This document shows positions 9,551-63,400 of a DNA stretch of 64,000 bases, in pieces. The notes beneath the pieces are model-generated. The model did no database searches, was not told where the DNA came from, and was given only the letters and a program-made list of their open reading frames with translations. Made by a program: the position numbers and the translations under genes. The stretch is taken from assembly GCF_902713615.1 (NCBI RefSeq), contig NC_052154.1, positions 92,077,030 to 92,141,029 on the forward strand. The letters run 5' to 3'. The DNA comes from Scyliorhinus canicula. Taxonomy: Eukaryota. The stretch's first letter is position 1, and each line of letters starts with the position of its first letter.

Positions 9551-12523
9551 TAAGAACATAAAAACATAAGAACTAGGAGCAGGAGTAGGCCATCTGGCCT
9601 CTCGAGCCTGCTCCGCCATTCAATTAGATCATGGCTGATCTTTTGTGGACTCAGCTCCACTTTCCAGCCCGAACACCATAACCCTTAATCCCTTTATTCT
9701 TCAAAAAACTATCTATCTTTACCTTAAAAACATGTAATGAAGGAGCCTCAACTGCTTCACTGGGCAAGGAATTCCATAGATTCACAACCCTTTGGGTGAA
9801 GAAGTTCCTCCTAAACTCAGTCCTAAATCTACTTCCCGTTATTTTAAGGCTATGTCCCCTAGTTCTGCTGTCACCCGCCAGTGGAAACAACCTGCCCGCA
9901 TCTATCCTATCTATTCCCTTCATAACTTTAAATGTTTCTATAAGATCCCCCCTCATCCTTCTAAATTCCAATGAATACAGTCCCAGTCTACTCAACCTCT
10001 CCTCATAATCCAACCCCTTCAGATCTGGGATTAACCTAGTGAATCTCCTCTGCACACCCTCCAGCGCCAGTACGTCCTTTCTCAAGTAAGGAGACCAAAA
10101 CTGAACACAATACTCCAGGTGTGGCCGCACTAACACCTTATACAATTGCAACATAACCTCCCTAGTCTTAAACTCCATCCCTATAGCAATGAAGGACAAA
10201 ATTCCATTTGCCTTCTTAATCACCTGTTGCACTTGTAAACCAACCTTCTGTGACTCATGCACTAGCACACCCAAGTCTCTCTGAACAGCGGCATGCTTTA
10301 ATATTTTATCATTGAAATAATAATCCCGTTTGCTGTTATTCCTACCAAAATGGAGAACCTCACATTTGTCAACATTGTATTCCATCTGCCAGACCCTAGC
10401 CCATTCACTTAACCTATCCAAATCCCTCTGCAGACTTCCAGTATCCTCTGCACTTTTCGCTTTACCACTCATCTTAGTGTCATCTGCAAACTTGGACACA
10501 TTGCCCTTGGTCCCCAACTCCAAATCATCTATGTAAATTGTGAACAATTGTGGGCCCAACACGGATCCCTGAGGGACACCACTAGCTACTGATTGCCAAC
10601 CAGAGAAACACCCATTTATCCCAACTCTTTGCTTTCTATTAATTAACCAATCCTCTATCCATGCTACTACTTTACCCTTAATGCCATGCATCTTTAGCTT
10701 TTGCAGCAACCTTTTGTGTGGCGCCTTGTCAAAGGCTTTCTGGAAATCCAGATATACCACATCCATCGGCTCCCCGTTATCTACTGCACTGGTAATGTCC
10801 TCAAAAAATTCCACTAAATTAGTTAGGCATGACCTGCCCTTTACGAACCCATGCTGCGTCTGCCCAATGGGACAATTTCTATCCAGATGCCTCGCAATTT
10901 CTTCCTTGATGATAGATTCCAGCATCTTCCCTACTACCGAAGTTAAGCTCATTGGCCTATAATTTCCTGCTTTCTGTCTACCTCCTTTTTAAACAGTGGC
11001 GTCACGTTTGCTAATTTCCAATCCACCGGGACCACCCCAGAGTCTAGTGAATTTCGGTAAATTATCACTAGTGCATCTGCAATTTCCTTAGCCATCTCTT
11101 TTAGCACTCTGGGATGCATTCCATCAGGGCCAGGAGACTTGTCTACCTTTAGCCCCATTAGCTTGCCCATCACTACCTCCTTAGTGATAACAATCATCTC
11201 AAGGTCCTCACGTGCCATAGCCTCATTTCTATCAGTCGCTGGCATGTTATTTGTGTCTTCCACTGTGAAGACCGACCCAAAAAACCTGTTCAGTTCCTCA
11301 GCCATTTCCTCATTTCCCATTATTAAAACTCCCTTCTCATCCTCTAAAGGACCAATATTTACCTTAGTCACTCTTTTTTGTCTTATATATTTGTAAAAAC
11401 TTTTACTGTCTGTTTTTATATTCTGAGCAAGTTTACTCTCATACTCTATCTTACTCTTCTTTATGGCTTTTTAAGTAGCTTTCTGTTGCCCCCTAAAGAT
11501 TTCCCAGTCCTCTAATCTCCCAGCAATCTTTGCCACTTTATATGCTTTTTCCTTCAATTTGATACTCTCCCTTATTTCCTTAGATATCCATGGTCGATTT
11601 TCCCTCTTTCTTCCGTCCTTCCTTTTTGTTGGTATAAACCATTGCTGAGCACTGTGAAAAATCGCTTGGAAGGTTCTCCACTGTTCCTCAACTGTTCCAC
11701 CATAAAGTCTTTGCTCCCAGTCTACCTTAGCTAGTTCTTCTCTCATCCCCTTGTAATCTCCTTTGTTTAAACACAAAACACTAGTATTTGATTTTACTTT
11801 CTCACCCTCCATCTGTATTTTAAATTCCACCATATTGTGATCGCTCCTTCCGAGAGGATCCCTAACTATGAGATCATGAATCAATCCTGTCTCATTGCAC
11901 AGGACAAGATCTAGGACCGCTTGTTCCCTCGTAGGTTCCATTACATACTGTTCTAGGAAACTATCGCGGATACATTCTATAAACTCCTCCTCAAGGTTGC
12001 CTTGACCGACCTGGTTAAACCAATCGACATGTAGATTAAAATCCCCCATGATAACTGCTGTACCATTTCTACATGCATCAGTTATTTCTTTGTTTATTGG
12101 CTGCCCCACCAAAACGTTACTATTTGGTGGCCGATAGACTACTCCTATCAGTGACTTTTTCGCCTTACTATTCCTGATTTTCACCCAAATGGATTCAACC
12201 TTATCCTCCATAGCACCAATGTCATCCCTTCCTATTGCCCGGATGTCATCCTTAAATAACAGAGCAACACCACATCCCTTACCATCCACTCTGTCCTTCC
12301 GAATAGTTTGATACCCTCGGATATTTAACTCCCAGTCGTGACCATCCTTTAACCATGTTTCAGTAATGGCCACTAAATCATAGTCATTTATGCTGATTTG
12401 TGCCATCAACTCATTTACTTTATTCCGAATACTACGAGCATTCAGGTAAAGTACACTTATGTTGGTTTTTTTTACCTTTGTTTTGAATCTTAACATCTTT
12501 TACCTTTGTTTTGAATCTTAACA
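9551..12523 (-). mobile_element. Young 5'-truncated CR1 LINE, nearly intact ORF2 (APE + RT), TSD TCATATTA
   Basis: ORFs 11471-12496 (APE: LNARSIRNK, AITETWL, MGDFN), 10949-11371 and 9651-10952 (RT: PQGSVLGP, FADD). One nonsense codon at about 11471 and one frameshift at about 10980. tcatatta lies at 9543-9550 and 12524-12531. Confidence 0.95.
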
Positions 12524-21555: not shown

Positions 21556-23009
21556 CGAAACTCCTTTAATAACGCTTAATCCCTTTATTCTTCAAAAAAA
21601 CTATCTATCTTTATCTTAAAAACATTTAATGAAGGAGTCTCAACTGCGTCACTGGGCAAGGAATTCCATAGATTCACAACCCTTTGGGTGAAGAAGTTCT
21701 TTGTAAACTCAGTCCTAAATCTGATTCCCCTTAATTTGAGGCTATGCCCCCCTAGTTCTGCTTTCACCCGGTAGTGGAAATAACCTGCCCGCATCGATCC
21801 TATCTATTCCCTTCATAATTTTATATATTTCGATAAGATCCCTCCTCCTCGCATCCTTCTAAATTCCAACGAGTACAGTCCCAGTCTACTCAAACTCTCC
21901 TCGTAATCCATCCCCCTCAACTCTGGGATTAATCGAGTGAATCTCCTCTGCACACCCTCCAGCACCAGTGCATCCTTTCTCGGGTAAGGACACCAAAACT
22001 GAACACAATACTCCAGGTGTGGCCTCACTAACACCTTATAAAATTCCAGCATAACCTCCCTAGTCTTAAACTCCATCCCTCTAGGAATGAAGGACAAAAC
22101 TCCATTTGCCTTCTTCATCACGTGTTTCTCCTGTAAACCAACTTTTTGCGACTCATGCACCAGCACACCCAGGTATCTCTGCACAGCAGCATGTTTTAAT
22201 ATTTTATTATTTAAATAATAATCCTTCTTGCTGTTATTCCTACCAAAATGGATAACCTCACATTTGTTAACATTGTATTCCATCTGCCAGACCCTAGTCC
22301 ATTCACTTACCACATCCATTGGCTCCTCGTTATCTACCGCACTGCTAAAACCCTCAAATAATTCCACTATATTAGTAAGGCATGACCTGCCCTTTATGGA
22401 CCCATGCTGCATCTTCCCAATGGAACAAGATCCATCTAGATGCCTCGCAATTTCTTCCTTGATGATAGATTCCAGCATCTTCCCTACTATCGAAGTTAAG
22501 CTAACTGGCCTATAATTACCCACTTTCAGCCTACCTCCATTTATAAACAGTTCTGTCATGTTTGATAATTTCCAATCCGCCGGGACCACCCCAGAGTCCA
22601 GTGATATTTGGTAAATTATCACAAGTGCATTTACAATTTCCCTAGCCATCTCTTTTAGCACTCTGGGATGCATTCCATCAGGGCCAGGAGACTTGTCTAA
22701 CTTTAGCCCCATTAGCTTTCCCATCACTACCTCCTTAGTGATAACAATCATGTCAAGGTCCTCATTTGTCATGGCCTCATTTCCATCGGTCACCGGCATA
22801 TTATTTCTGTTTTCCACTGTGAAGACCGAACCAAAAAACCTGTTCAGTGCCTCAGCCATTTCCTCATCTCCCATTGCTAAATCGCCCTTCTGATCCTCTA
22901 AAGGAGCCAATATTTACATTAGCCACACTTTTTTGTTTTATATATTTGTAGAAACTTTTACTATCTGTTTTTATATTCTGAGAAAGTTTACTCTCAAAGT
23001 CTATCTTTC

Positions 23010-24004: not shown

Positions 24005-25998
24005 ATAGAACATAGAACATTGAACGATACAGCGCAGTACAGGCCCTTCGGCCCTCGATGTTGCACCGACATGGGAAGTCCAAAAACTAAAGGCCATCTA
24101 ACCTACACTATCCCATTATCATCCATATGCTTATCCAATAAACTTTTAAATGCCCTCAATGTTGGCGTGTTCACTACTGTTGCAGGTAGGGCATTCCACG
24201 GCCTCACCACTCTTTGCGTAAAAAACCCACCTCTGACCTCTGCCAATATCTATTACCCCTCAATTTTAGGCTATGTCCCCTCGTGCTAGCCACCTCTATC
24301 AGCGGGAGAAGGTTCTCATGTCCACCCTATCTAACCCTCTGATCATTTTGTATGCCTCTATTAAGTCACCTCTTAACCTTCTTCTCTCTAACGAAAACAA
24401 CCTCAAGTCCATCCGCCTTTCCTCATAAGATTTTCCTCCATACCGGGCAACATCCTAATAAATCTCCTCTGCACCCGCTCCAAAGCTTCTACGTCATTCC
24501 TATAATGAGGCGACCAGAACTGTACGCAATACTCCAAATGCAGCCGTACTAGAGTTTTGTACAACTGGGGCTGGTTTAGGCCTGTAGGGGCTGGTTTAGT
24601 TCACAAGGCTAAATCACTGGCTTTTAAAGCAGACCAAGCAGGCCAGCAGCACGGTTATATTCCCGTAAAAGCCTCCCCGGACAGGCGCCGGAATGTGGCG
24701 ACTAGGGGCTTTTCACAGTAACTTCATTGAAGCCTACTCGTGACAATAAGCGATTTTCATTTCATTTCAACTGCTACATGACCTCATGGCTCCAGAGCTT
24801 AATCCCTCTACCAATAAAGGCCAACACACATTAGGCCTTCTTCACAACCCTATCAACCTGGGTGGCAACTTTCAGGGATCTATGTACATGGACACCGAGA
24901 TCCCTCTGCTCATCCACACTACCAAGAATTTTACCATTAGCCAAATATTCCGCATTCCTGTTATTCTTTCCAAAGTGAATCACCTCACATTTCTCCACAT
25001 TAAACTCCATTTGCCACCTCTCAGCCCAGCTCTGCAGCTTATCTATGTCCCTCTGTAACCTGCAACATCCTTCCGCACTGTCTACAACTCCACTGACTTT
25101 AGTGTTGTCTGCAAATTTACTCACCCATCCTTCTGCGCCCTCCTCTAGGTCGTTTATAAAAATGACAAACAGCAACGGCCCCAGAACAGATCCTTGTGGT
25201 ACGCCACTCATAACTGAACTCCATTCTGAACATTTCCCATCAACCACCACTCTCTGTCTTCTTTCAACTTGCCAATTTCTGATCCACATCTCTGAATCAC
25301 CCTCAATCCCCAGCCTCCGTATTTTCTGCAATAGCCGACCGTGGGGAACCTTATCAAACGCTTTACTGAAATCCATATACACCACATCAACTGCTCTACC
25401 CTCGTCTACCTGTTCAGTCACCTTCTCAAAGAACTCGATAAGGTTTATGAGGCATGGCCTACCCTTCACAAAACCATGCTGACTGTCCCTAATCATATTA
25501 TTCCTATCAAGATGATTATAAATCGTATCTTTCATAATCCTCTCCAAGACTTTACCCACAACAGACGTTAGGCTCACCGGCCTAGAGTTACCGGCGTTAT
25601 CTCTACTCCCCATCTTGAACAAAGGGACCACATTTGCTATCCTCCAGTCCTCTGGCACTAATCCTGTAGCCAATGGTGACATAAAAATCAAAGCCAAAGG
25701 TTCAGCAATCTCTTCCCTGGCTTCCCAGAGAATCCTAGGATAAAACCCATCAGGCCCCGGGGACATATTTATTTTCACCTTGTCCAGAATTGCCAACACT
25801 TCTTCCCTACGCACCGCAATGCCATCTATTCTAATAGCCTGGGTCTCAACATTCTCCTCCACAACATTATCTTTTTCCTGAGTGAATACTGACGAAAAGT
25901 ATTCATTTAGTATCTCGCTTATCTCCTCAGCCTCCACACACAACTTCCACCACTGTCCTTGACTGGCCCTACTCTTACCCTAGTCATTCTTTTATTCC
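24005..25998 (-). mobile_element. 5'-truncated HER1-like CR1 LINE nested in the endonuclease region of the host CR1
   Basis: RT ORF 24831-25943 is very similar to the 60932-63025 ORF. Tail (agaacat)n at 24005-24020. The host reads accatc|ctttaacc across the insertion. Confidence 0.92.
24567..24769 (+). mobile_element. tRNA-derived SINE with (TTTCA)n tail nested in the nested CR1
   Basis: ggggctggtttag head, near-identical to 34872-35057. The host sequence aact is duplicated at both ends. Confidence 0.85.
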
Positions 25999-37258: not shown

Positions 37259-38899
37259 GTTGACTGTTTTAAAGTTAGAGATTGGCAATAATTGAGGTCC
37301 ATCCAGCGACCGCCAATTCCCATGAACAAATTAGAAACATCAGCAAGTTAAGGCCTATCGGTTGAGTGAATCAGATAAATCAGTTACCTAACATAAATAT
37401 ACCTTGTGTATCTTAGAGAAAGCAATGTCAGGCTGCCATAATCAAATCTCCCAGTAACGCCACGATCAACGTACAATCTAAGCACGTGTTTGTAAAGGGA
37501 AAACACTGGACAATGTAAACCAATGTTAGTTTAAGATACACGATTAAAATAATTGAATTAAAAACAAAAGTTATTGCTAAATCTTGGAGGACGGGCATTT
37601 TTGAAGGAAGACAGTTTCCAAGGCTGTAACCTTGTGTTACTCTGATCCACATTGTGAGATCATGCCAGGCACTTTTAATCGTTTGTAGTTTGATTTAACT
37701 CAATTTATTTATGTAAAACCCACTCTCCAAGAATATAATCAAGGTGATGAGCAAACAAAGTTAAGAGTGAAAATTATTCTGTTCAATGACATTGTATTTT
37801 TCTGAATGAGTTCACAGAGTAATAACATTGCAGATATCACACGGAATCACATTACAGTTCAGTATGGGCAAGGCTGAGGCAGACAGGTTTCTAATCAGTA
37901 AGGGAATCAAAGGTTGTGGGGATAAGGCGGCAAAGTGGAGTTTAGGAATATCAGATCAGTCATGATCTCGTTGAATGGAGCATCAGATTTGATGAACCTT
38001 GCTTCTTCCCCATGTCACATAACCTTAAAGTCTAAAACTATAATCAGTTAATTTACATTTTAGTCACACGCAGCAAATAGATATAAATATCAAAAAGGAA
38101 ACAAATAGCTCCAACATTAAATGACTTTGTGCAACATCAAAGATTGACAGGAATGCCAGTTTCGCTCAATGACCTTTTCTTGGTTGCCAGACCCGTGAAC
38201 AGGATGGTACAGGTCGATCCCCAATGAACATATCAAATGGAGCTTTGGTGAAAAAACAATATAATGACTCAACCCACTTTATCAAGCGAGATAAACAACG
38301 TTATTGTTACGTGGAATCTTCTTGCAGATTGCATGTACGTTTCCCAGTAGGCAGTGCAAATGTTTCAGTCTTGACATTTGTTCATGAGAAAGAAATTACA
38401 TGTCCAGCTTCACAAGTTAATCAAAAGACTCACTTGTCCTCACCAAGTAATAAATCAACTAAAATAAAGAAATAAACAATGTTTAGTATATTAAATAGCG
38501 TGAATTATTTTGTTTTTAACCACTGCTTCATGTATTTCCCTTTTCTGAAACTGACTGCATTTCCGTGAATAACTTTAACATTATCAGTCACATTTACATT
38601 GTCATATTACATCTCAAGCTCGCTTTAGTTATCAATGCATGTTGCAGAAGTAAAAGATTTAATTTTTCAAGTACACAATATGCAATCTGTAAAAAAAGAA
38701 CCGATTGCCTCATGAAATATAAGTTAAATAGTATCTATAAGTATTGCAGATAATTTGCACGAAAGGAATTAACTTTAAATACCTATAGTCCCTATCTATA
38801 ACTGATACATATATTATGACGATGAAATATTCAGAAACAGGGGAATTCATAACAGGGAAACAAATAAATGGCTGAGCAACAAATATTATCTTCACAAAG

Positions 38900-40532: not shown

Positions 40533-40712
40533 GAACATAGAACATAGAACAGTACAGCACAGAACAGGCCCTTCGGCCCTCGATGTTGTGCCGAGCAATG
40601 ATCACCCTACTTAACCCACGTAACCGGTATACCCGTAACCCAACAATCCCCCCATTAACCTTACACTACGGGCAATTTAGCATGGCCAATCCACCTAACC
40701 CGCACATCTTTG
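40533..40712 (-). mobile_element. 5'-truncated HE1-like SINE
   Basis: Reverse complement of caaagatgtgcggg...ttctatgttctatgttct. Confidence 0.88.
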
Positions 40713-41184
40713 TTCTTTGATATATCTCTTGGGCCTAAAGGGATCAAGAGTTATGGGGGTAAAGCCGAATCAGGGTATTGAATTTGATGATCAGCCATGA
40801 TCATAATGAATGGTAGAGCAGGCTCGAAGGGCCGAATCGTCTCCTCCTGCTTTCATTTTCCATGTTTCGATGAATCTAAACAGAAGCTGTACAAATGCTG
40901 GATGATCAAATAATGCCTTGCATCTTCCTGATTCAATTAGTTAGAAAAGCATGCACACCATTTGCCTTTCCTGAGTATACTGTAGTTCGGCTTTGTTTTT
41001 AAGAAGTTATGAACCTAATTAAAAGTTTGCAAATTGTACAGCTGGACGATGTTAAATTGTTTTCCAAACATTTTGGAATATTACAGCAATTTTCACCTGT
41101 CCTCATATAGTTCCACATTCTTCCCATAACTAGGTATGTATGGATCTATTTTACTATCATGCTGTGATAAGTATTTCACAATTA

Positions 41185-41845
41185 ATGGGCAGCACGGTGA
41201 TGCAGCGGATAGCACTCTTGCGCCGAAGACCAGGGTTGGATCCCCGACTCGGATCACTGTCCGTGTTGAGTTTGCACATTTTCACTGTCTCCTTGTGTCT
41301 CACCGCCACAACCCAAAGATGTGCATTGTGGGTGGATTGGAGGTGCTAAATTGTCCCTTAGATTTCACAACTAATATGAATTTCGTCTGGATGATAATAG
41401 GAAATTATCTGATTCTTCAGTGAAATTTGGATTGGAAGCTTCTCCTTTAATAAGTAGCCACAAACAAACAATCTTTGAGGATTATTGTACGCAATAACAC
41501 TTTAAATGGGCTTCTGTTTAAAATTGTTTTACAAAGCAAATGTATGTTTAATTTTCAAACTGCAATATAAAAAGTGGTTAGCACTGTTGCTTCACAGCGC
41601 CAGGGTGCCAGGTTTGATTCCTGACTTGGGTCACTGTCACTGCAGAGTCCGTGACTGTGTGTGGTTCCACCGGGTGGTCTGGTTTCATCCCACAAGTTCT
41701 GAAAGATGTGCTGTTAGGTAATTTGGACAGTCTGAATTCTCCCTCTGTGCACCCGAACAGGTACCGGAGTGTGGCGACTATGGGCTTTTCACAGTAACTT
41801 CAATGCAGTGTTGCAGCCTACTTGTGACAATAAAAATTATATTTT
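41185..41845 (+). mobile_element. Two SINE remnants (about 41185-41360 and 41560-41845)
   Basis: gggcagcacggt head with V core; the second copy has the ATT-family tail. Confidence 0.7.
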
Positions 41846-41850
41846 TTTAC

Positions 41851-41886
41851 CGAATGTTAGGCGGAAATATCTCAAATTATAAGGTG
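41851..41886 (-). other. Candidate 36-nt exon downstream of the TM exon (cytoplasmic relic or 3' UTR exon)
   Basis: Strong pyrimidine tract tgtttattctctcgtttgtcacag|, donor TTCG|gtaaaa, phase 1-1, open as (A)PYNLRYFRLTF. Based on splice signals only. Confidence 0.35.
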
Positions 41887-42125
41887 CTGTGACAAACGAG
41901 AGAATAAACACTCAGGATTTACTTTGATTAATTTAATGTCTTCTTTTACAATATGGGCCATGTTTGGATTCACTAACGGTCAATTCTATTTCTAATTTTG
42001 TGAATTGTTTTCGATATTTTCCGAGAGCACCTCGCAATCTGTTTGTTGTTGGATGCAAGCGATAGCCCAGCGAATTCGGGTGAAACACACAATTAGTCTG
42101 CAATAATATATTGCTTACCTTTAAA

Positions 42126-42226
42126 TCAGCTCCGTTTGAAATGGACGACAATCATAATTATCAAAATGAGAATCACGAGGAAGCCTAATACAAAACGAGG
42201 GATCAGAGCAACCTGGAACCTGTGAA
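42126..42226 (-). CDS. VJ-C1 IgSF receptor gene, transmembrane exon with Arg and short tail (HRFQVALIPRFVLGFLVILILIIMIVVHFKRS*)
   Basis: Phase-1 acceptor ctacactttag|TT. Encodes a long hydrophobic stretch with one Arg near its outer end, a basic stop-transfer HFKRS and TGA at 42128-42126. A strong donor AAAG|gtaagc follows at 42119/42118, making a symmetric 108-nt exon. It is not in the supplied ORF track. Linkage to the C1 exon is inferred. Confidence 0.75.
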
Positions 42227-42659
42227 CTAAAGTGTAGGATTTACAGGAATCATATAAATTTAGGATACAAGAACAGGATTGAAATGAATGGACACATAAT
42301 TACAATATATCTAAGTACAATAAGGACGGACATGCCGTATGTGGGTTTTAGAACATAGAACATAGAACAGACAATGCAGAATCAAAAATGAAGCAAATTA
42401 GTTATGTTCTGCAGTATGTTTCCATTATATGAAATGCGGGAGGACTGCGTCCATATATGTAAATTCAAGGATGCATTGCTGGAACCAGTCCTCACGAAAT
42501 CACTAAATTGTTAACAGAAACTGACTTATGCTCCACGGTTTCCCGTGTTCAGTGGATCCAAATAAAATGCAGTTGTTCCAGAAATAAACAATGGTCTTAA
42601 GGTCATTTATGTGCAACAAAAGAACAATTTGCAAGTTACCTAATTGCAAGGTAATTTCA

Positions 42660-43000
42660 AATAACAAAGAAAAGTACAGAACAGGAACAGGCCCTTCGGC
42701 CCTCCAAGCCTGTGCCGATCATGATGCCCTAACTAAAGAAAAACCTTTGGCCCTTTTCTCGGTCCATTGCCCTCTATTTCTTCCCTATTCTGTATTCATC
42801 CAGTAGCCTCATAAATGTTGTTAATATGCATTTTACACCACATCCTCTGGCATTCCAGGCACCCACCACTCTCTGCGTGAAAAACGTATCACACGCATCT
42901 ACCTTAAACTTTCCCCCTCTAATTTTGAACCTACGCCCCTTGTAATTGGCACTTCCACCCTTGGAAAAAGCCTCATTGGACTTCGAATATTTTATTGACC
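42660..43000 (-). mobile_element. CR1 3' end fragment
   Basis: [12 protein letters not shown] (ORF 42774-43040) and a ggcccttcggcc tail stem. Confidence 0.8.
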
Positions 43001-43486
43001 CCCATATCACACACACACCTCCTTGACATCCTCCCCCCACCCCACACCACTCCCATATAAATATTCCAGCTTACTTTGAGAAATACAACTGCATAGAAAT
43101 TTAAATAGTTTGCAGTGAAAAGGAAAGCACGTAGAATCGATGTTTCAATATACTTGCTGGAATTAATTAGTTTTTCATTACTATTTCAGTTCAGCACAGG
43201 GATGAAATGGAAGATTCCCAATACGATACTGAGGACGGAAATTTTGTATGGAAAATAAAATGCCAAAATGATTTCTGGGAAAGACAATTATTATCCATGG
43301 CTCTTCATTCAAGTGCATGATTTTTTGTGCCACTAAGCTAATTTTATAAATGTGAACTAGGGGTTATGACTGTTTTTACTTAATGTCCTTAATACTGGAA
43401 TGCTAGCCATTTTAGTGCGGCTGGGGAACAGCACTCTGTGTTTCTTAGATGAATTGACTGACCAGGATAAACAAGACAAATTTAGA

Positions 43487-45370
43487 ACATAGAACATAGA
43501 ACATTACAGCGCAGTACAGGCCCTTCGGCCCTCGATGTTGTGCCGACCTGTGAAACCATCTGAAGCCTATCTGACCTACACTATTCCATTTTCATCCATA
43601 TGTCTATCCAGTGACCACTTAAATTCCCTTAAAGTTGGCGAGTCTACTACTGTTGCAGGCAGGGCGTTCCACACCCCTACTACTCTCTGAGTAAAGAAAC
43701 TGCCTCTGACATCTGTCCTATATCTACCACCCCTCAATTTAAAGCTATGTCCCCTCGTGTTGGTCATCACCATCCAAGGAAAGAGACTCTCACTGTCCAC
43801 CCTATCTAACCCTCAGACTATCTTATGTCTCTATTAAGTCACCTCTCAGCCTTCTCCTCTCTAACGAAAACAACTTCAAGTCCCTGAGCCTCTCCTCGTA
43901 AGACCTTCCCTCCATACCAGGCAACATCCTAGTAAATCTCCTCTGAACCCTTTCCAAAGCTTCCACATCCTTCCTATAATGTGATGACCAGAATTGCACG
44001 CAGTACTCCAGGAACGGCCGCATCAGAGTTATGTACAGCTGCAGCATGACCTTGTGGCTCCGAAACTCAATCCCCTACTGATAAAGGCTAGCACACCATA
44101 TGCCTTCTTAACAGCCCTATTAAACTGGGTGGCAATTTTCAGGGATTTATGTACCTGGATGCCGAGATCTCTCTGTTCATCTACACTACCAAGAATCTTG
44201 CCATTAGCCCAGTACTCTGCATTCCTGTTACTCCTTCCAAAGTGAACCACCTCACACTTTTCCGCATTAAACTCCATCTGCCACCTCTCAGCCCAGCTCT
44301 GCAGCTTATCTATGTCCCTCTGTATCCTATAACATCCTTCACCACAACTCCACCGACCTTCGTGTCATCTGCAAATTTACTAACCCATCCTTCTACACAC
44401 TCTTCCAGGTCATTTATAAAAATGACAAACAGCAGTGTCCCCAAAGCAGATCCTTGCGGTACACCACTAGTAACTGAACTCCAGGATGAACATTTGCCAT
44501 CAACGACCATCCTCTGTCTTCTTTCAGCTAGCCAATTACTGATCCAAACCGCTAAATCACGTTCAATCCCATACTTCCTTATTTTCTGCAATAGCCTACC
44601 GTGGGGAACCTTATCAAACGCCTTACTGAAATCCATATACACCACATCAACCACTTTACCCTCATCCACCTGTTTGGTCACCTTCTCAAAAAACTCAATA
44701 AGGTTTATGAGGCATGACCTACCCTTCACAAAACCGTGTTGAGTATCGCAAATCAACTTGTTCTTTTCAAGATGATTATAAACCCTATCTCTTATAACCT
44801 TTTCCAACATTTTACCCACAACCGAAGTAAGGCTCGCAGGTCTATAATTACCAGCGTTGTCTCTACTTCCCTTCTTGAACAAGGGGACAACATTTGCTAT
44901 CCTCCAGTCTTCCGGCACTATTGCTGTCGACAAAGACGACATAAAGATCAAGGACAAAGGCTCTGCAATCTCCTCCCTGGCTTCCTAGAGTATCCTAGGA
45001 TAAATCCCATCTGGCCCAGGGGACTTATCTATTTTTACACTTTCCAAAATTGCTAACACCTCCGCCTTGTGAACCTCAATCCCATCTAGCCTGGTCGACT
45101 GAACCTGAGTATTCTCCTCGACAACGTTGTCTTTCTCCAGTGTAAACACCGACGAAAAATATCCATTTAACGCTTCCGCTATCTCCTCTGATTCCACACA
45201 CAACTTTCCACTACTATCCTTGATTGGCCCTAATCTTACTCTAGTCATTCTTTTGTTCCTGGTATACCTATAGAAAGCCTTAGGGTTTTCCTTGATCCTA
45301 TCCACCAACGACTTTTCGTGTCCTCTCCTCGCTCTTCTTAACTCTCCCTTTAGGTCCTTCCTGGCTAACA
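43487..45370 (-). mobile_element. 5'-truncated CR1 LINE inside the C1-TM intron
   Basis: ORFs 44985-45371, 44310-44957 (PQGSALG, FADD), 44029-44277, 43823-44047 and 43576-43800. Tail (agaacat)n at about 43487-43505. Confidence 0.92.
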
Positions 45371-46108
45371 TTTGAGATGCTATTAACGATAAACGGGACT
45401 TGCCTTCGGACTTTTGGGCATTCTGAATGTCATAGACAAGATTTGTTTCACATAAGCAAGAAAGTGGTAGTAGTTAAGTCCACAATGCATGCCTGTGGTA
45501 GATCTTTTGTGGATCGAAGAAAAAAATGTCTATGTGATTACGTATTAACAGTAAAATGCAAAGATGACCCTTAATTACGTCTACTGTTTGTGAATATTTA
45601 CTGAAGTATTGATTGAGGCCGACAGCTGTGGACCAAACAAATAGAATTGTGTAAGTGAAAATTCTGCTTTCAATGGATTCATGATAACGCGGTATGTGGT
45701 GTGACATATATTTTGATGCAGATATTTTTTTAAGATCTTCAGAGAGATGGAAAGGTAGAAGGTGGACACATAGAATCCACAGTTTTGGTTTAGCTGGACT
45801 TCTACCACATATAAATGATTATATTGCATTCTGCAACCCCAAACTTCTTGTGCACATTTGCAGTGTGGCAGGGCGGGGACGATGTTCACGGGTCGTTGAA
45901 TTTTAAGGACCTGGACAAAAACCATGAAAAGGTTTCGAAATAACGATATTAATTTCAATGTTGCTAGAATGTAGTCTCTGTTGCTGTTTAAAAAGCAAAT
46001 TACTGTGGATGGTGGAATCTGAAACTAAAGAGAAAATGTTTCAAAATGTTCCGGCATTTTCTCTGTGGTCTCTGTTGCTGTTGATGATCTGTAAATAACT
46101 GAACTTAC

Positions 46109-46438
46109 AATTGTTGTTTGCTCCACCAGTTGGCACACCTTTCCAATTTAGGGCATTGAAGGTGACATTAACTGGAATCTTAAGAGTCCGATGAGCTACT
46201 TGGCAGGTTACGTAACGAAGAGTTGGTGTGACTTCCAAGCAGCTGGAAAGTTCATAAAGTCCTTCGGAATTTAGTTTTATAACTGTATTTATCCCAGTCT
46301 CAATACGAAAGCCATCCTTGTACCAAGTCACATTGATACGATCCGGGTAAAACGCTGCCGTTTTACATAAAATAATTAGAGTTTTGGATGCATTAATGTC
46401 AGGTAATTCGGACTTGATGCTCAACGGAATTGGAGGAA
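46109..46438 (-). CDS. VJ-C1 IgSF receptor gene, C1-set domain exon
   Basis: Acceptor ctctctctgctttattttgcag|TT, consensus donor AATT|gtaagt, 330 nt, phase 1-1. C1-set motifs LCKTAAFYPDRINVTWYKDG, GLYELSSCLEV and YVTCQVAHRTL are present. Confidence 0.92.
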
Positions 46439-47441
46439 CTGCAAAATAAAGCAGAGAGAGACGTGTTTATGTTGATGCCAGCTTCCTAATAAAAGGCATT
46501 GGCTAATCATTCGATTTTCACTTGTCCATAAACTCTCCGCCATATTTTGCGGCGTTTACAGAGCAATTATGTTTTGCACCCGCTACAGGGTATCTTGAAA
46601 GAGCATGAGGTGCGCAAACACTGTGTATCACTTTGAGGAGTTTGAATGAATCAAAAGGTGAATAATATGGGATCTAACCCATTTGCTAGCAGAGTTAAGT
46701 CAAAATCAAAACAGCCTCGGAAAGTGATATTGCAAGTAAATATATGTAGGATTAAGGAACAATGGTGAAACAGTCAGGAAATCAGTAGAAAATGTGATGA
46801 ATATCTGTATATAGTACATGACAATTGTATGATTTGAGATATATTCTGAAATTGTTTGGAACTAAGTGTGCCGTGCAGTGATTAGAGAATCGAGATGAGG
46901 GCTTCGTTAATAATTATAGTTCCTTCGCAACAGCTGAATCTTAATGTTGAATAATATCATTAAGTGATAAAAGCGAATTTGCAGCCCCATTGGACAACAG
47001 TTATCGATATATTTTATTGACTTTCATTTAAATATAAATCAGAAGAGCAAAAAAAGTGATACCAATTAGTTACAACGTGCTCCATATTTTGCTGCGAAGT
47101 CAGGATCTACTGCAGTCAATTCATCAATTAAATACCAATGGAATTGCATTATAGTTGTCACACACAAATGGGGATTCATTTAAATTTTATCAAAGTGGAA
47201 AGTTCATGACATGTGATTAACAGTCTGCTGTATCTCTCTCTCGTGTGTCCTTCATATCACTTTGCATAACTCGCAGTGAACCGTGAAGTATTATTTTCCA
47301 TTGCAATGCAAATAATATGTCTTACCAGAGCCACCGGAAAGCAACAATCAAAGTTCAATAATCATATTAATTATAATACATATTCGATATCACCTGTTCT
47401 CAATTATGTACAGAATAATGTAAGGTGCGATTTTCGATTAC

Positions 47442-47762
47442 CGTAGACGACAAGCGTGGACCCAGTTCCATTTGTAAATAGGTTATCCAGATGTTTTACT
47501 CCGCAGTAATAGACTCCAGAATCTGCGACCTGGACTTTCAGGAGCTGAAGAGAGGCTTCACCTTTCCTCAAACGAACAATTTTTTTTCTACTGTCCGTTC
47601 CCGGCTGCAGGAAGTCAGTGTCGCCCAGTTTCCACCAATAAATATTCGCTTTCGAAATATCTTGAAGAAAATGAAACGCGCAATGAAATGTAAAGTTATC
47701 ACCTTCCATCCCGTGAGCATTTTGGGGGGCTTGGAATACTTTCCTCTGACCATCAGCAATAT
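47442..47762 (-). CDS. VJ-C1 IgSF receptor gene, V-set domain exon with germline-encoded J-like strand
   Basis: Acceptor ttattcctcacag|AT, donor TACG|gtaatc, 321 nt, phase 1-1. Translation: (D)IADGQRKVFQAPQNAHGMEGDNFTFHC...IYWWK...ASLQLLKVQVADSGVYYCGVKHLDNLFTNGTGSTLVVY. Both Ig cysteines, the C-strand Trp, DxGxYxC and a GxG-T-L-V-V G strand are present. Confidence 0.92.
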
Positions 47763-47927
47763 CTGTGAGGAATAAATGTAAACAGTAAGAACATTATTCT
47801 CGGGCATCAAAAGTAAAAGTGGAAGAAAAGGAAAAAGAGATTTAGAGCGGGTTGGGGATGAGGGTAGAGGGTCGGGGTAGTTGGGCGGGATGGGGGTAGG
47901 GAGGGGCTAAGAACGTTAAAGATATAC

Positions 47928-47985
47928 CTGTGTAGGTAATGAGGAGAAGATGTACACATGGAAGCAAAACAGCATCCAAAAACAT
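47928..47985 (-). CDS. VJ-C1 IgSF receptor gene, leader exon (MFLDAVLLPCVHLLLITYT)
   Basis: ATG at 47985, then 19 hydrophobic codons plus 1 nt and a phase-1 donor ACAG|gtatat. It splices in frame to the V exon across a 165-nt intron. Confidence 0.8.
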
Positions 47986-48199
47986 GTTCAACAGAGGAAA
48001 TATCGATTCACCATCAGGTGGCACTGAGCCCAGGTTGCTTCAATGTCGCATAAGTAATTAACTCAAAGTCACTTCCACGTGGTGCCTGCCGAAAGAATGA
48101 GATAAATCAACGGATTATGGAACAATCAGTCATTCGCATCACACCTGGTCAGAACATTTGAAGAATCATTCGTATAAACCGCAGAGCATGGTTGTTGTG

Positions 48200-60498: not shown

Positions 60499-63400
60499 GA
60501 ACATAGAACATAGAACATAGAACGATACAGCGCAGTACAGGCCCTTCGGCCCTCGATGTTGCACCGACATGGAAAAAAAAAACTAAAGCCCATCTAACCT
60601 ACACTATGCCCTTATCATCCATATGCTTATCCAATAAACTTTTAAATGCCCTCAATGTTGGCGAGTTCACTACTGTTGCAGGTAGGGCATTCCACGGCCT
60701 CACCACTCTTTGCGTAAAAAACCCACCTCTGACCTCTGTCCTATATCTATTACCCCTCAATTTAAGGCTATGTCCCCTCGTGCTAGCCACCCCCATCCGC
60801 GGGAGAAGGCTCTCGCTGTCCACCCTATCTAACCCTCTGATCATTTTGTATGCCTCTATTAAGTCACCTCTTAACCTTCTTCTCTCTAACGAAAACAACC
60901 TCAACTCCATCAGCCTTTCCGCATAAGATTTTCACTCCATACCAGGCAACATCCTGGTAAATCTCCTCTGCACCCGTTCCAAAGCTTCCACGTCCTTCCT
61001 ATAATGAGGCGACCAGAACTGTACGCAATACTCCAAATGCAGCCGTACTAGAGTTTTGTACAACTGCAACATGACCTCATGGCTCCGGAACTCAATCCCT
61101 CTACCAATAAAGGCCAACACACCATAGGCCTTCTTCACAACCCTATCAACCTGGGTGGCAACTTTCAGGGATTTATGTACATGGACACCGAGATCCCTCT
61201 GCTCATCCACACTACCAAGGATTTTACCATTAGCCAAATATTCCGCATTCCTGTTATTCTTTCCAAAGTGAATCACCTCACACTTCTCCACATTAAACTC
61301 CATTTGCCACCTCTCAGCCCAGCTCTGTAGCTTATCTATGTCCCTCTGTAACCTGCAACATCCTTCCGCACTGTCTACAACTCCACCGACTTTAGTGTCG
61401 TCTGCAAATTTACTCACCCATCCTTCTGCGCCCTCCTCTAGGTCATTTATAAAAATGACAAACAGCAACGGCCCCAGAACAGATCCTTGTGGTACGCCAC
61501 TCGTAACTGAACTCCATTCTGAACATTTCCCATCAACTACCACTCTCTGTCTTCTTTCAACTAGCCAATTTCTGATCCACATCTCTAAATCACCCTCAAT
61601 CCCCAGCCTCCGTATTTTCTGCAATAGCCGGCCGTGGGGAACCTTATCAAACGCTTTACTGAAATCCATATACACCACATCAACTGCTCTACCCTCGTCT
61701 ACCTGTTCAGTCACCTTCTCAAAGAACTCGATAAGGTTTGTGAGACATGACCTACCCTTCGCAAAACCATGCTGACTATCCCTAATCATATTATTCCTAT
61801 CTAGATGATTATAAATCGTATCTTTTATAATCCTCTCCAAGACCTTACCCACCACAGACGTTAGGCTCACCGGCCTATAGTTACCGGGGTTATCTCTACT
61901 CCCCTTCTTGAACAAAGGGACCACATTTGCTATCCTCCAGTCCTCTGCCACTATTCCTGTAGCCAATGATGACCTAAAAATCAAAGCCAAAGGCTCAGCA
62001 ATCTCTTCCCTGGCTTCCCAGAGAATCCTAGGATAAATCCCATCCGGCCCCGGGGACTTATCTATTTTCACCTTGTGCAGAATTGCCAACACTTCTTCCC
62101 TACGCACCTCAATGCCATCTATTCTAATAGCCTGGGTCTCAGCATTCTCCTCCACAATATTATCTTTTTCTTGAGTGAATACTGACGAAAAGTATTCATT
62201 TAGTAAATCGCTTATCTCCTCAGCCTCCACACACAACTTCCCACCACTGTCCTTGACTGGCCCTACTCTTACCCTAGTCATTCTTTTATTCCTGACATAC
62301 CTATAGAAAGCTTTTGGGTTTTCCTTGATCCTACCTGCCAAAGACTTCTCATGTCCCCTCCTTGCTCGTCTCAGCTCTCTCTTTAGATCCTTCCTCGCTT
62401 CCTTGTAACTATCAAGCGCCCCAATTGAAACTTCATGCTTCATCTTCACATAGGCCTCCTTCTTCCTCTTAACAAGAGATTCCACTTCTTTGGTAAACCA
62501 CGGTTCCCTCGCTCGACCCCTTCCTCCCTGCCTGACTGGTATGTACTTATCAAGAACATGCAATAGCTGTTCCTTGAACAAGCTCCACATATCCAGTGTG
62601 CCCAACCCTTGCAGTCTACTTCTCCAACCAACACATCCTAAGTCATGTCTAATGGCATCATAATTGCCCTTCCCCCAGCTATAACTCTTGCCCTGCGGGG
62701 TATACTTATCCCTTTCCATCACTAACGTAAAGGTCACCGAATTGTGGTCACTGTTCCCAAAGTGCTCACCTACCTCCAGATCTAACACCTGGCCTGGTTC
62801 ATTACCCAAAACCAAATCCAATGTGGCCTCGCCTCTTGTTGGCCTGTCAACATATTGTGTCAGGAAACCCTCCTGCACACATTGTACAAAGAACGACCCA
62901 TCTAATGTACTCGAACTATACCTTTTCCAGTCAATATTTGGAAAGTTAAAGTCTCCCATAACAACTACCCTGTTACTTTCGCTCTTTTCCAGAATCATCT
63001 TCGCCATCCTTTCCTCTACGTCCAAAGATGTGCGGGTTAGGTGGATTGGCCATGCTAAATTGCCCGTAGTGTAAGGTTAATGGGGGGATTGTTGGGTTAT
63101 GGGTATACGGGTTACGTGGGTTTAAGTGGGGTGATCATTGTTCGGCACAACATCGAGGGCCGAAGGGCCTGTTCTGTGCTGTACTGTTCTATGTTCTATG
63201 TTCTATCCCTAGAACTATTAGGTGGCCTATAGAAAACTCCCAACAGGGTGACCTCTCCTTTCCTGTTTCTAACCTCAGCCCATACTACCTCAGAAGAAGA
63301 GTCCCCATCTAGCATCCTTTCCGCCACCGTAATACTGTCCTTGACTAGCAGCGCCACACCTCCCCCTCTTTTGCCCCCTTCTCTGAGCTTACGAAAACAC

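What the first reader, a model, noticed from the sequence alone, without database searches (positions are those of the whole stretch)
42126..47985. Non-rearranging antigen-receptor-like gene: leader / germline-joined VJ / C1 / Arg-containing TM
Seen: four exons with GT-AG borders and phase-1 junctions splice into one 269-aa frame (58+321+330+101 nt including the stop). The V exon already encodes a CDR3-like loop and J-like strand (YYCGVKHLDNLFTNGTGSTLVV), and I see no CACAGTG heptamer in it. The second domain is C1-set (C-x4-FYP-x2-I-x-V-x-W, YVTCQVAH). Five N-x-S/T sequons are present. Established: C1-set domains are largely restricted to Ig, TCR, MHC, beta2m, tapasin, SIRP and B7-H6-type proteins, and germline VJ with a GxG strand marks NKp30/NCR3, CD8, SIRP and PRARP/VJC1-type genes. 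Inference: this is a shark innate-type receptor that mimics a single TCR/IgL chain without RAG rearrangement, a candidate relative of the pre-RAG antigen-receptor ancestor. It is easy to miss because it sits among TEs and the TM exon is absent from the ORF track.
Basis: partly seen in the sequence, partly recalled or inferred. Interest (0 to 1): 0.85.

Follow-up and report, generated by a model that had tools for sequence, protein, structure and literature searches.

The report
Catshark tail-less V-C1 immune receptor gene
This is a real, transcribed small-spotted catshark gene for a surface receptor built like one antigen-receptor chain that needs no gene rearrangement. It is the short-tailed, probably activating member of a large shark, ray and chimaera family, and it is already in RefSeq under a misleading automatic name.

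Summary
On the minus strand, four coding exons (58+321+330+101 nt) splice through GT-AG introns into a 269-aa protein with a split leader, a V domain with a built-in J-like strand, a true C1-set domain, a transmembrane helix that starts with Arg247, and a 3-residue tail. RNA contigs from four public runs carry exactly these junctions. They also show a fifth, untranslated exon. The protein is identical to a RefSeq model of Scyliorhinus canicula named "tapasin-related protein-like", so the gene was not missed. That name is a misnomer.

The gene belongs to a large chondrichthyan-only family (sharks, batoids, chimaera) annotated under about six inconsistent automatic names. Most members have ITIM-rich tails. 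This gene sits in a six-species orthologue clade that keeps an Arg-type transmembrane segment and a short tail without motifs.

The nearest outsiders I could sample are sarcopterygian SIRPs, with moderate support. The V domain does not nest in Ig or TCR.

Best reading: an activating-type, adaptor-coupled partner in a SIRP-like paired-receptor family. Adaptor coupling is inferred, not shown. The "pre-RAG ancestor" claim gains no specific support. This scan had already found the same family elsewhere in this genome.

The parts
47928..48050 (-). Exon 1: 5' UTR plus the first part of the split leader. The ATG is at 47985 and the CDS covers 47928-47985 (19 codons plus 1 nt). The transcript continues about 90 nt beyond 48050.
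   Evidence: X1, X3 and X4 contigs cover 47928-48050 and are joined to 47762. One search shows an in-frame stop upstream of the ATG.
47442..47762 (-). Exon 2: end of the leader plus a V-set domain with a germline-joined J-like G strand, all in one exon and with no RSS.
   Evidence: frame, no heptamer or nonamer. (V-set 4.9e-9). (contigs identical to the genome across the whole exon).
47446..47472 (-). J-like motif NGTGSTLVV (residues 117-125). The GxG bulge is kept, and the Phe of the canonical FGxG is replaced by an N-glycosylation sequon that is nearly invariant in the family.
   Evidence: N117 present in at least 90% of sequences, G118 invariant, G120 present in at least 90%.
46109..46438 (-). 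Exon 3: C1-set domain plus stalk. It has 13 residues between Cys151 and Trp165, FYP at the start of the BC loop, and CQVAH after the F-strand Cys.
   Evidence: C1-set 1.9e-11, against CD80-like C2-set 2.6e-4. for the joints. The hallmark list is from PMC2785349.
46109..46138 (-). Catshark-specific 10-aa stalk extension (GVPTGGANNN). It arises because the gtaagt donor at 46108 is used instead of the unused phase-1 donor AAAG|GTGTGC at 46138, which lies where other sharks splice.
   Evidence: only the 46109 joint is seen. (orthologue alignment)..
42119..42226 (-). Exon 4: stalk end, transmembrane helix and a 3-aa tail. The stop codon is at 42126-42128, 7 nt before the donor AAAG|gtaagc.
   Evidence: (helix 245-268 in the model).
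42195..42197 (-). Codon of Arg247, in the first turn of the transmembrane helix, directly before the 19-residue hydrophobic core.
   Evidence: Arg is conserved in 5 of 6 orthologues and in Heterodontus P0039; Chiloscyllium has Gln.
37699..38458 (-). Exon 5: 3' UTR. AATAAA lies at 37704-37709. One contig reads on to 37340.
   Evidence: X1 2100-nt contig positions 971-2100; X4 868-nt contig ends at 37699. (acceptor ttttag|TTGATT, poly(A) signal).

Best explanation
The locus is an expressed, non-rearranging gene of Scyliorhinus canicula. It encodes a 269-aa type I membrane glycoprotein: split leader, one V domain with a built-in J-like strand, one C1-set domain, a short stalk, a transmembrane helix beginning with Arg247, and a tail of three residues.

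It is the catshark orthologue of a lineage conserved in carcharhiniform, lamniform and orectolobiform sharks. That lineage lies inside a large, chondrichthyan-only V-C1 receptor family, most of whose members carry ITIM-rich inhibitory tails.

Most likely mechanism (inferred):
- The V domain binds a conserved, probably host-encoded ligand through its CDR-like loops as a single domain, as SIRP does.
- The receptor has no signalling tail, so it signals by pairing Arg247 with the membrane aspartate of an ITAM adaptor. The position of the Arg near the outer face points to the FcR-gamma/CD3-zeta type rather than DAP12.
- It thereby gives the activating counterpart to the inhibitory family members.

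Shown: gene structure, transcription, splicing, absence of rearrangement signals, domain types, orthology and family membership.
Inferred: adaptor coupling, activating function, monomeric ligand binding and the nature of the ligand.

The confidence of 0.6 is for the whole statement. The gene and family parts alone stand at about 0.95.
For: Gene model and transcription:
- Exons, frame and sequons are; domain types are.
- Exact splice joints appear in contigs of four runs, and a 2100-nt contig spans all five exons.
- The product is identical to RefSeq P0163 in assembly GCA_902713615.2.

No rearrangement:
- No RSS, and V and J lie in one exon.
- The V exon in RNA contigs shows 0 differences from the germline.

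Family:
- The profile of 26 members gives E of 1e-61 or better only to sharks, batoids and Callorhinchus. The next hits are at about 1e-14.
- The ectodomain HMM gives at least 187 bits inside the family and at most 91 outside.
- Most members have ITIM tails.

Orthologue clade:
- The six-species clade has support 98* in the ectodomain tree and 98/92* in the V tree, and it follows the species tree.
- All six have the same TM type and tails of 3-19 aa without tyrosine motifs.
- Arg is kept in 5 of the 6.
- TM identity to S. torazame is 96%, against 91% for V and 87% for C1.

Structure and ligand:
- The model has pLDDT 87.5, with the TM helix at 245-268 and Arg247 in its first turn.
- The best rigid superposition is on human SIRP-beta-1 d1-d2, TM-score 0.62 and rmsd 4.4 A.
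- The base of the CDR3-like loop, YYCGVKH, is invariant in the six orthologues, which suggests a conserved ligand.

Established knowledge: a basic TM residue in a tail-less Ig receptor pairs with FcR-gamma or DAP12 (PMC4016189).
Against: - No adaptor, ligand or cell type was tested.
- Arg247 lies at the very edge of the hydrophobic core, so it could simply snorkel at the outer interface.
- Chiloscyllium has Gln at this position.
- The acidic residue near the inner end of the TM, conserved in the other sharks, is Val in both catsharks.
- The nearest ITIM-bearing relatives are at most about 50% identical in the ectodomain. This gene therefore has no near-identical inhibitory twin among the proteins I could see, and pairing is shown at family level only.
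- The tissue of the RNA runs is not disclosed.
- I did not check whether FcR-gamma, CD3-zeta or DAP12 exist in the catshark.
Confidence: 0.6

Rival explanations
1. Non-signalling binder. The protein is a tail-less decoy, adhesion or ligand-sink receptor, like SIRP-gamma. Arg247 is only a membrane-boundary residue with no adaptor partner.
For: - Arg247 is the residue just before the hydrophobic core.
- Gln replaces it in Chiloscyllium.
- Catsharks shortened an already short tail further through a TGA 7 nt before the donor.
- Catsharks also lost the inner acidic residue.
Against: - Arg is kept in 5 of 6 orthologues and in a second ectodomain lineage (Heterodontus P0039, also P0043).
- The TM is the best-conserved part between the two catsharks, at 96%. 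That is unusual for a mere anchor.
- A basic residue on the outer side of a TM goes against the positive-inside rule (established knowledge).
Confidence: 0.25
2. Relic close to the pre-RAG antigen-receptor ancestor. The family would descend directly from the VJ-C1 precursor whose V exon the RAG transposon invaded.
For: - The gene has a VJ-C1 layout with a split leader, as in antigen-receptor genes (PMC12227049).
- Foldseek ranks Ig light chains and TCR-beta first by E-value.
- phmmer aligns residues 88-214 collinearly with lambda chains.
- The family is as old as the chimaera-elasmobranch split.
Against: - The same features hold for SIRP, PRARP and UrIg, so they single out nothing.
- The V tree is unresolved at depth.
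- The ectodomain groups with SIRPs rather than with IgNAR, IgL-like or TCR-beta-like rows (SH-aLRT 91).
- The family lacks FGxG, and a glycan sits where the V-V interface Phe would be.
- Linkage to the MHC or to antigen-receptor loci was not testable.
Confidence: 0.1
3. B7/butyrophilin-type ligand (NCR3LG1-like, as several orthologues are auto-named) rather than a receptor.
For: - Automatic names.
- Foldseek finds B7-H6, butyrophilins and CD276 with TM-scores of 0.55-0.60.
- CD276 appears in the PDB sequence hits.
Against: - The C domain scores as C1-set (1.9e-11) far better than as CD80-like C2-set (2.6e-4).
- The V has a J-like GxG strand.
- Paralogues carry multiple ITIMs and this lineage carries a TM Arg, which is receptor-type wiring.
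- SIRPs score higher than any B7-type protein in the family profile.
Confidence: 0.05

Closest known systems
SIRP family (SIRP-alpha, -beta and -gamma; structure 2WNG, PMC2785349)
   Same: - Non-rearranging V domain with a J-like strand, followed by true C1-set domain(s).
- Family with ITIM-tailed members and tail-less, basic-TM members.
- Best outside hits of the family profile are coelacanth, duck, lungfish and lizard SIRPs at 71-91 bits.
- The tree groups them together with SH-aLRT 91.
- Best rigid structural fit is human SIRP-beta-1.
   Different: - One C1 domain here instead of two.
- Arg at the outer edge of the TM instead of the mid-membrane Lys of SIRP-beta (recalled, not tested).
- NGTGS rather than the SIRP GAGTELSV-type motif.
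- Only about 25-30% identity.
- Orthology, synteny and CD47 binding are untested.
PRARP genes of birds, reptiles, amphibians and bony fish (Fu et al. 2019, J Immunol 202:1992; cited in PMC10751288 and PMC11599192)
   Same: As cited, these are non-rearranging IgSF genes with a joined VJ domain, listed alongside SIRP, NKp30, CD8 and NITR. From my memory of the abstract, their layout is V-C-TM.
   Different: - No PRARP reference sequence or paper text was available, so the relationship is untested.
- Turtle, frog and catfish V-C-TM-ITIM proteins that might be PRARP-type fall away from the shark family in the tree. Their C domains are not hit by the family C1 profile.
UrIg and UrIg2 of elasmobranchs (PMC12227049; PDB 9DMX)
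   Same: Shark, non-rearranging, single-exon VJ with a split leader, and C1-type constant domains.
   Different: - UrIg and UrIg2 have three to eleven C domains, form disulfide-linked dimers, and are linked to the MHC or the antigen-receptor complex.
- This protein has one C1 and no stalk cysteine.
- It scores no closer to 9DMX (4e-14) than to Ig lambda or SIRP-alpha.
NKp30/NCR3 and other FcR-gamma/CD3-zeta-coupled Ig receptors (NKp46, Fc-alpha-RI, LILRA)
   Same: Tail-less receptors with an Arg near the outer end of the TM. NKp30 also has a germline VJ domain. These points are recalled, not tested here.
   Different: NKp30 has no C1 domain. The others have C2/I-type domains. No sequence relationship was shown.

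Membership tests
Chondrichthyan V-C1 receptor family (auto-named SIRP-alpha-like, NCR3LG1-like, tapasin-related-like, Ig-lambda-like) | Collinear V+C1 ectodomain matching the family profile, with the hallmarks WWKxGE, DSGVYYC, NGTGSxLxV, VPP(T/I)PL, FYP and GLYE. | tested here: met
   285 bits against the family HMM, with the family floor at 187 and the best outsider at 91. All invariant columns are present. The gene lies inside the family clade, support 98*.
Chondrichthyan V-C1 receptor family, activating-type lineage | TM of the type xRFxLxFLVILxL...H with a short tail lacking tyrosine motifs. | tested here: met
   The tail is 3 aa with no Tyr. Arg247 is present. The inner acidic residue is lost in both catsharks.
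SIRP family | N-terminal V-set domain with a J-like strand, encoded in the germline. | tested here: met
SIRP family | Two membrane-proximal C1-set domains (d2, d3). | tested here: not met
   Only one C1 exon lies between V and TM, and the RNA contig joins V-C1-TM directly.
SIRP family | Orthology or synteny with SIRP loci, and CD47 binding. | not testable with these tools
   No flanking genes lie within reach. The tree support is only moderate.
C1-set Ig domain | 13 residues between the B-strand Cys and the C-strand Trp; (F/Y)(F/Y/H)P at the BC loop; xVxH after the F-strand Cys (PMC2785349). | tested here: met
   C151 to W165 spans 13 residues; FYP and CQVAH are present. Pfam C1-set E 1.9e-11.
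Rearranging or germline-joined Ig light chain / TCR chain | RSS-flanked segments in the family, the FGxG J motif, a C-terminal or stalk Cys for chain pairing, and a V that nests in IgL or TCR clades. | tested here: not met
   There is no heptamer or nonamer, NGTGS replaces FGxG, and there is no stalk Cys. A TM exon is present. The family is separate from the IgL-like, IgNAR and TCR-beta-like rows. Shark IgL and TCR references were few.
Tapasin / TAPBPR (the RefSeq name of this protein) | A large N-terminal tapasin domain before the C1 domain, giving a protein of about 430-470 aa. | tested here: not met
   The protein is 269 aa with a V-set domain at the N-terminus. No tapasin or TAPBPR appears among the best PDB sequence hits or the Swiss-Prot fold hits.
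UrIg / UrIg2 | VJ followed by three or more C1-type domains. | tested here: not met
   One C1 only. The match to 9DMX is no better than to Ig lambda or SIRP.
PRARP | Sequence relationship to chicken PRARP genes. | not testable with these tools
   The paper is not held and no named PRARP sequence was returned by any search.
B7 / NCR3LG1 | V without a J-like strand plus a CD80-type C domain; ligand rather than receptor wiring. | tested here: inconclusive
   C1-set scores far better than C2-set_2. The fold similarity is generic, TM-score 0.55-0.60. No reference B7-H6 was in the trees.

The most novel reading that the evidence does not exclude
The chondrichthyan V-C1 family, including this anciently fixed Arg-TM lineage, is the cartilaginous-fish counterpart of the SIRP/PRARP stock. 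On this reading it would be a direct, never-rearranged descendant of the VJ-C1 precursor of antigen receptors. This gene, with its invariant CDR3-like base, would be an activating sensor for a conserved self ligand, of CD47 or MHC type. That would put a paired 'self-check' system at the root of jawed vertebrates.
Probability: 0.15. Interest if true: 0.65.

Novelty: new member of a known kind. Interest (0 to 1): 0.35.

Why it matters
It adds a well-documented example to the small set of non-rearranging V-C1 receptors (SIRP, PRARP, UrIg) that bear on how antigen receptors arose: five exons, RNA support and six-species orthology. It shows that in cartilaginous fish such genes form a large family with inhibitory members and tail-less, Arg-TM members. 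It also corrects the annotation: the RefSeq name "tapasin-related protein-like" is wrong, and orthologues carry five other names. I found no paper on this family. The gene itself is not a discovery, because the model already exists and this scan has reported the same family at other places in this genome.

Tried and rejected
- **Paralogues in the window.** tblastn with the four exon products found none, only the gene itself.
- **ITIM-tail relic downstream.** tblastn with the tails of 36 family members found nothing. It only showed the lamniform read-through homology at the TM exon end.
- **V exon homology search.** Searching the V exon alone against the 5.8-billion-protein set gave one hit, because of the tool's length filter: a mis-spliced S. 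torazame model.
- **Profile searches of PDB.** Searches with V-only and C1-only family profiles were dominated by multi-domain proteins (titin, contactin, IgH) and did not discriminate between families.
- **V-only tree.** The deep nodes are unresolved, and long branches (IgNAR, IgH) are drawn into the family polytomy, so it says nothing on origin.
- **DNA of orthologues for dN/dS.** None was returned because the files were too large. Only protein identities per domain could be compared.
- **Literature.** Fu 2019 and Flajnik 2023 are not held. Searches for PRARP, SIRP with shark, and paired receptors with cartilaginous fish gave no description of this family. A search for adaptors in cartilaginous fish was uninformative.
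- **Alternative TM acceptor.** An acceptor at 42219 breaks the frame and was rejected.
- **Germline-joined IgL, tapasin-related and UrIg readings.** All were rejected on defining features; see the membership tests.

Full report
**1. Observation**

The gene lies on the minus strand. Four coding exons join into 810 nt, which is 269 codons plus TGA:
- 47928-47985
- 47442-47762
- 46109-46438
- 42126-42226

The introns are all GT..AG and phase 1. An alternative acceptor at 42219 breaks the frame.

ATG 47985 is the first in-frame ATG after an upstream stop. Pfam scores the second exon as V-set (4.9e-9) and the third as C1-set (1.9e-11, against 2.6e-4 for the CD80-like C2 set).

The C1 domain also meets the three hallmarks listed by Hatherley et al. 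(PMC2785349):
- 13 residues between Cys151 and Trp165
- FYP at the BC loop
- CQVAH after the F-strand Cys

**2. Transcription and full gene model**

Logan contigs of four public runs of the same species carry exactly the three predicted joints: 47762|47928, 46438|47442 and 42226|46109. Each is CT..AC on the plus strand, and the V exon shows no differences from the genome.

One 2100-nt contig runs through all exons and continues past the stop. The TM exon ends at 42119 (AAAG|gtaagc). It is spliced to a fifth exon that starts at 38458 (ttttag|TTGATT). A second run's contig ends at 37699, ten bases after an AATAAA at 37704-37709.

The stop codon therefore lies 7 nt before the last exon junction. 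By the usual 50-55-nt rule (established knowledge) that is too close to trigger nonsense-mediated decay.

The only variants seen were a synonymous change in codon 202 and a 9-nt indel in the 3' UTR. The runs' tissues are not disclosed.

**3. It is already annotated**

The spliced product is identical to a 269-aa RefSeq protein of Scyliorhinus canicula named "tapasin-related protein-like". That protein lies on a 198.8-Mb chromosome of GCA_902713615.2, with a CDS span of 5860 nt.

The name is wrong. There is no tapasin N-terminal domain. Tapasin and TAPBPR are absent from the best sequence and fold matches.

**4. Family**

A search with the C1 exon, and then with full-length relatives and a 26-sequence profile, found a large family restricted to Chondrichthyes:
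- Sharks: Scyliorhinus, Mustelus, Carcharodon, Cetorhinus, Chiloscyllium, Stegostoma, Rhincodon, Heterodontus, Heptranchias
- Batoids: Amblyraja, Leucoraja, Mobula, Hemitrygon
- Chimaera: Callorhinchus

These members are named automatically as SIRP-alpha-like, SIRP-beta-like, NCR3LG1-like, tapasin-related-like, Ig-lambda-like, MHC class II beta-like or CD276.

Profile E-values are 1e-61 or better inside the family and then fall to about 1e-14. An ectodomain HMM gives at least 187 bits inside and at most 91 outside.

The invariant or near-invariant features are a WW pair in strand C, DSGVYYC, N-G-T-G-S-x-L-x-V, VPP(T/I)PL, FYP, GLYE and CxVxH. The sequon NGT sits where antigen-receptor J segments have the Phe of FGxG. 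That Phe lies at the V-V interface (established knowledge), so a glycan there argues for a single-domain binding site. This last step is inference.

Most members have a GGLAFLLLLIIIGK-type TM and long tails with several ITIM-like motifs (LTYAxL, TVYAQ, TEYAxL).

**5. This gene's lineage**

In the ectodomain tree and in the V tree the gene sits in a clade of six species. The branching follows the species tree: Chiloscyllium; Carcharodon plus Cetorhinus; Mustelus; the two Scyliorhinus. Support is 98* and 98/92*.

All six share a distinctive TM (xRFxLxFLVILxL...) and tails of 3-19 residues without tyrosine. Arg is kept in five; Chiloscyllium has Gln.

Between the two catsharks, identity by region is:

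| Region | Identity |
|---|---|
| TM | 96% |
| V | 91% |
| C1 | 87% |

The base of the CDR3-like loop, YYCGVKH, is invariant in all six.

Three changes are specific to catsharks:
- **Shorter tail.** A TGA cuts about 11 residues from the already short tail. The read-through frame, FKVDLLLGEDK, resembles the white-shark tail, FKDLVQKEKCN.
- **Longer stalk.** A shift to a downstream donor adds ten stalk residues.
- **Lost acidic residue.** The acidic residue near the inner end of the TM is lost.

The same TM type also occurs on a different ectodomain lineage. Heterodontus P0039 has an ectodomain that clusters with ITIM members, which points to exon exchange within the family.

The nearest ITIM relatives of this gene are only about 50% identical. 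Pairing is therefore shown for the family, not for a twin of this gene. A first-stage note reports an ITIM/ITSM V-C1 gene about 15 kb before the window (s1-268224). I could not read it.

**6. Relation to known families**

By name look-up, the best outsiders for the family ectodomain profile are SIRPs:

| Outsider | Bits |
|---|---|
| Coelacanth SIRP | 90.9 |
| Duck SIRP | 79.5 |
| Lungfish SIRP | 73.8 |
| Shark IgNAR | 71.7 |
| Lizard SIRP | 70.7 |
| Teleost IgL-like proteins | 54-61 |
| Turtle proteins auto-named TCR-beta-like | about 50 |

The quick ML tree puts the family (98*) with the SIRPs and against the other rows at SH-aLRT 91. That value is not starred, and the outgroup sampling is thin.

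Domain by domain the picture is less clear. The C1 profile scores Ig lambda C (52 bits) about as high as SIRP domains (44-58). The V profile scores turtle and catfish V-C-TM proteins (39-41) above SIRP V (21-30). The V-only tree is unresolved at depth.

The AlphaFold model is confident, with pLDDT 87.5. Foldseek ranks Ig light chains and TCR-beta first by E-value. The best rigid fit over both domains is human SIRP-beta-1, with TM-score 0.62 and rmsd 4.4 A.

The gene is not UrIg or UrIg2, which have three to eleven C domains (PMC12227049). PRARP could not be tested because neither the paper nor a named sequence was available.

**7. Mechanism**

Shown: a glycosylated V-C1 ectodomain, one TM helix (residues 245-268 in the model) and no signalling tail.

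Inferred:
- The receptor signals through an ITAM adaptor. This is the known solution for tail-less Ig receptors with a basic TM residue (PMC4016189).
- The Arg lies in the first turn, followed by 19 hydrophobic residues. From memory, this is the arrangement in FcR-gamma/CD3-zeta-coupled receptors such as NKp46 or Fc-alpha-RI, rather than the mid-membrane Lys of DAP12 partners. This is a lead, not a test.

The main rival is a non-signalling decoy, because the Arg is at the membrane edge and is not universal.

I put the gene and family statements at about 0.95 and the activating, adaptor-coupled reading at about 0.55-0.6.

**8. Novelty and verdict**

The kind of gene is known: non-rearranging V-C1 receptors with inhibitory and activating forms. 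The model is in RefSeq. Other agents of this scan have already described the same family at other places in this genome (s1-258541, s1-240101, s1-253600).

I found no paper on the family in nine literature searches. The value of this report is a verified five-exon model, a corrected name, a six-species orthologue lineage of the tail-less form, and a bounded statement on its relatives.

The evolutionary interpretation is only partly supported.

Noticed in passing
window 46109-46138 (minus strand): An unused phase-1 donor, AAAG|GTGTGC, lies at 46138, where other sharks end the C1 exon (NWK|V...). Both catsharks splice 30 nt further on at gtaagt, which adds ten residues to the stalk.
   Followed up: partly
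window 42117-42128 and 38428-38458 (minus strand): The TGA lies 7 nt before the donor. Read through, the frame gives FKVDLLLGEDK and then a stop in exon 5, which resembles the lamniform tail FKDLVQKEKCN. The catshark lost about 11 tail residues, not an ITIM tail.
   Followed up: yes
window 42650-42900, 43480-43700, 40540-40740, 41540-41940: Short interspersed repeats in the introns begin with tagaacatagaacat...caggcccttcggcc. They show RNA-contig word depths of 1e4 to 1e5 in all four runs, so they are very abundantly transcribed repeat families.
   Followed up: no
window 44310-45371 (minus strand), inside intron 3: A LINE reverse-transcriptase fragment with ORFs of 215 and 128 aa lies in the same orientation as the gene. 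Similar RT ORFs fill much of the window, for example 9654-10988, 21816-22913, 24834-25979 and 60935-63076. The receptor is the only cellular gene I recognised.
   Followed up: no
P0039 (Heterodontus francisci) against P0170, P0064 and P0173: The Arg-type TM and short tail occur on an ectodomain that clusters (99*) with ITIM-tailed members. This suggests exchange of TM and tail exons between activating and inhibitory genes.
   Followed up: partly
P0192, P0194, P0195, P0197, P0199 (turtles), P0201 (frog), P0202 (catfish): These proteins of about 300 aa have a V domain (the turtle ones ending in FGTGTRLIV), one C domain, a TM and a TEYAAV- or VTYAAL-type tail. They are auto-named TCR-beta-like or IgG heavy-chain-like. 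They may be the PRARP-type genes of bony vertebrates.
   Followed up: no
P0164 against P0001 (Scyliorhinus torazame): The newer RefSeq model of the S. torazame orthologue has an unrelated N-terminus in place of the MFLDAV leader. The older, mis-spliced model does contain that leader. The first exon of the orthologue is probably mis-called.
   Followed up: no
window 46212 and 37519: Run X1 carries a synonymous G>A change (Tyr202) and a 9-nt insertion in the 3' UTR. These are ordinary allelic variation.
   Followed up: yes
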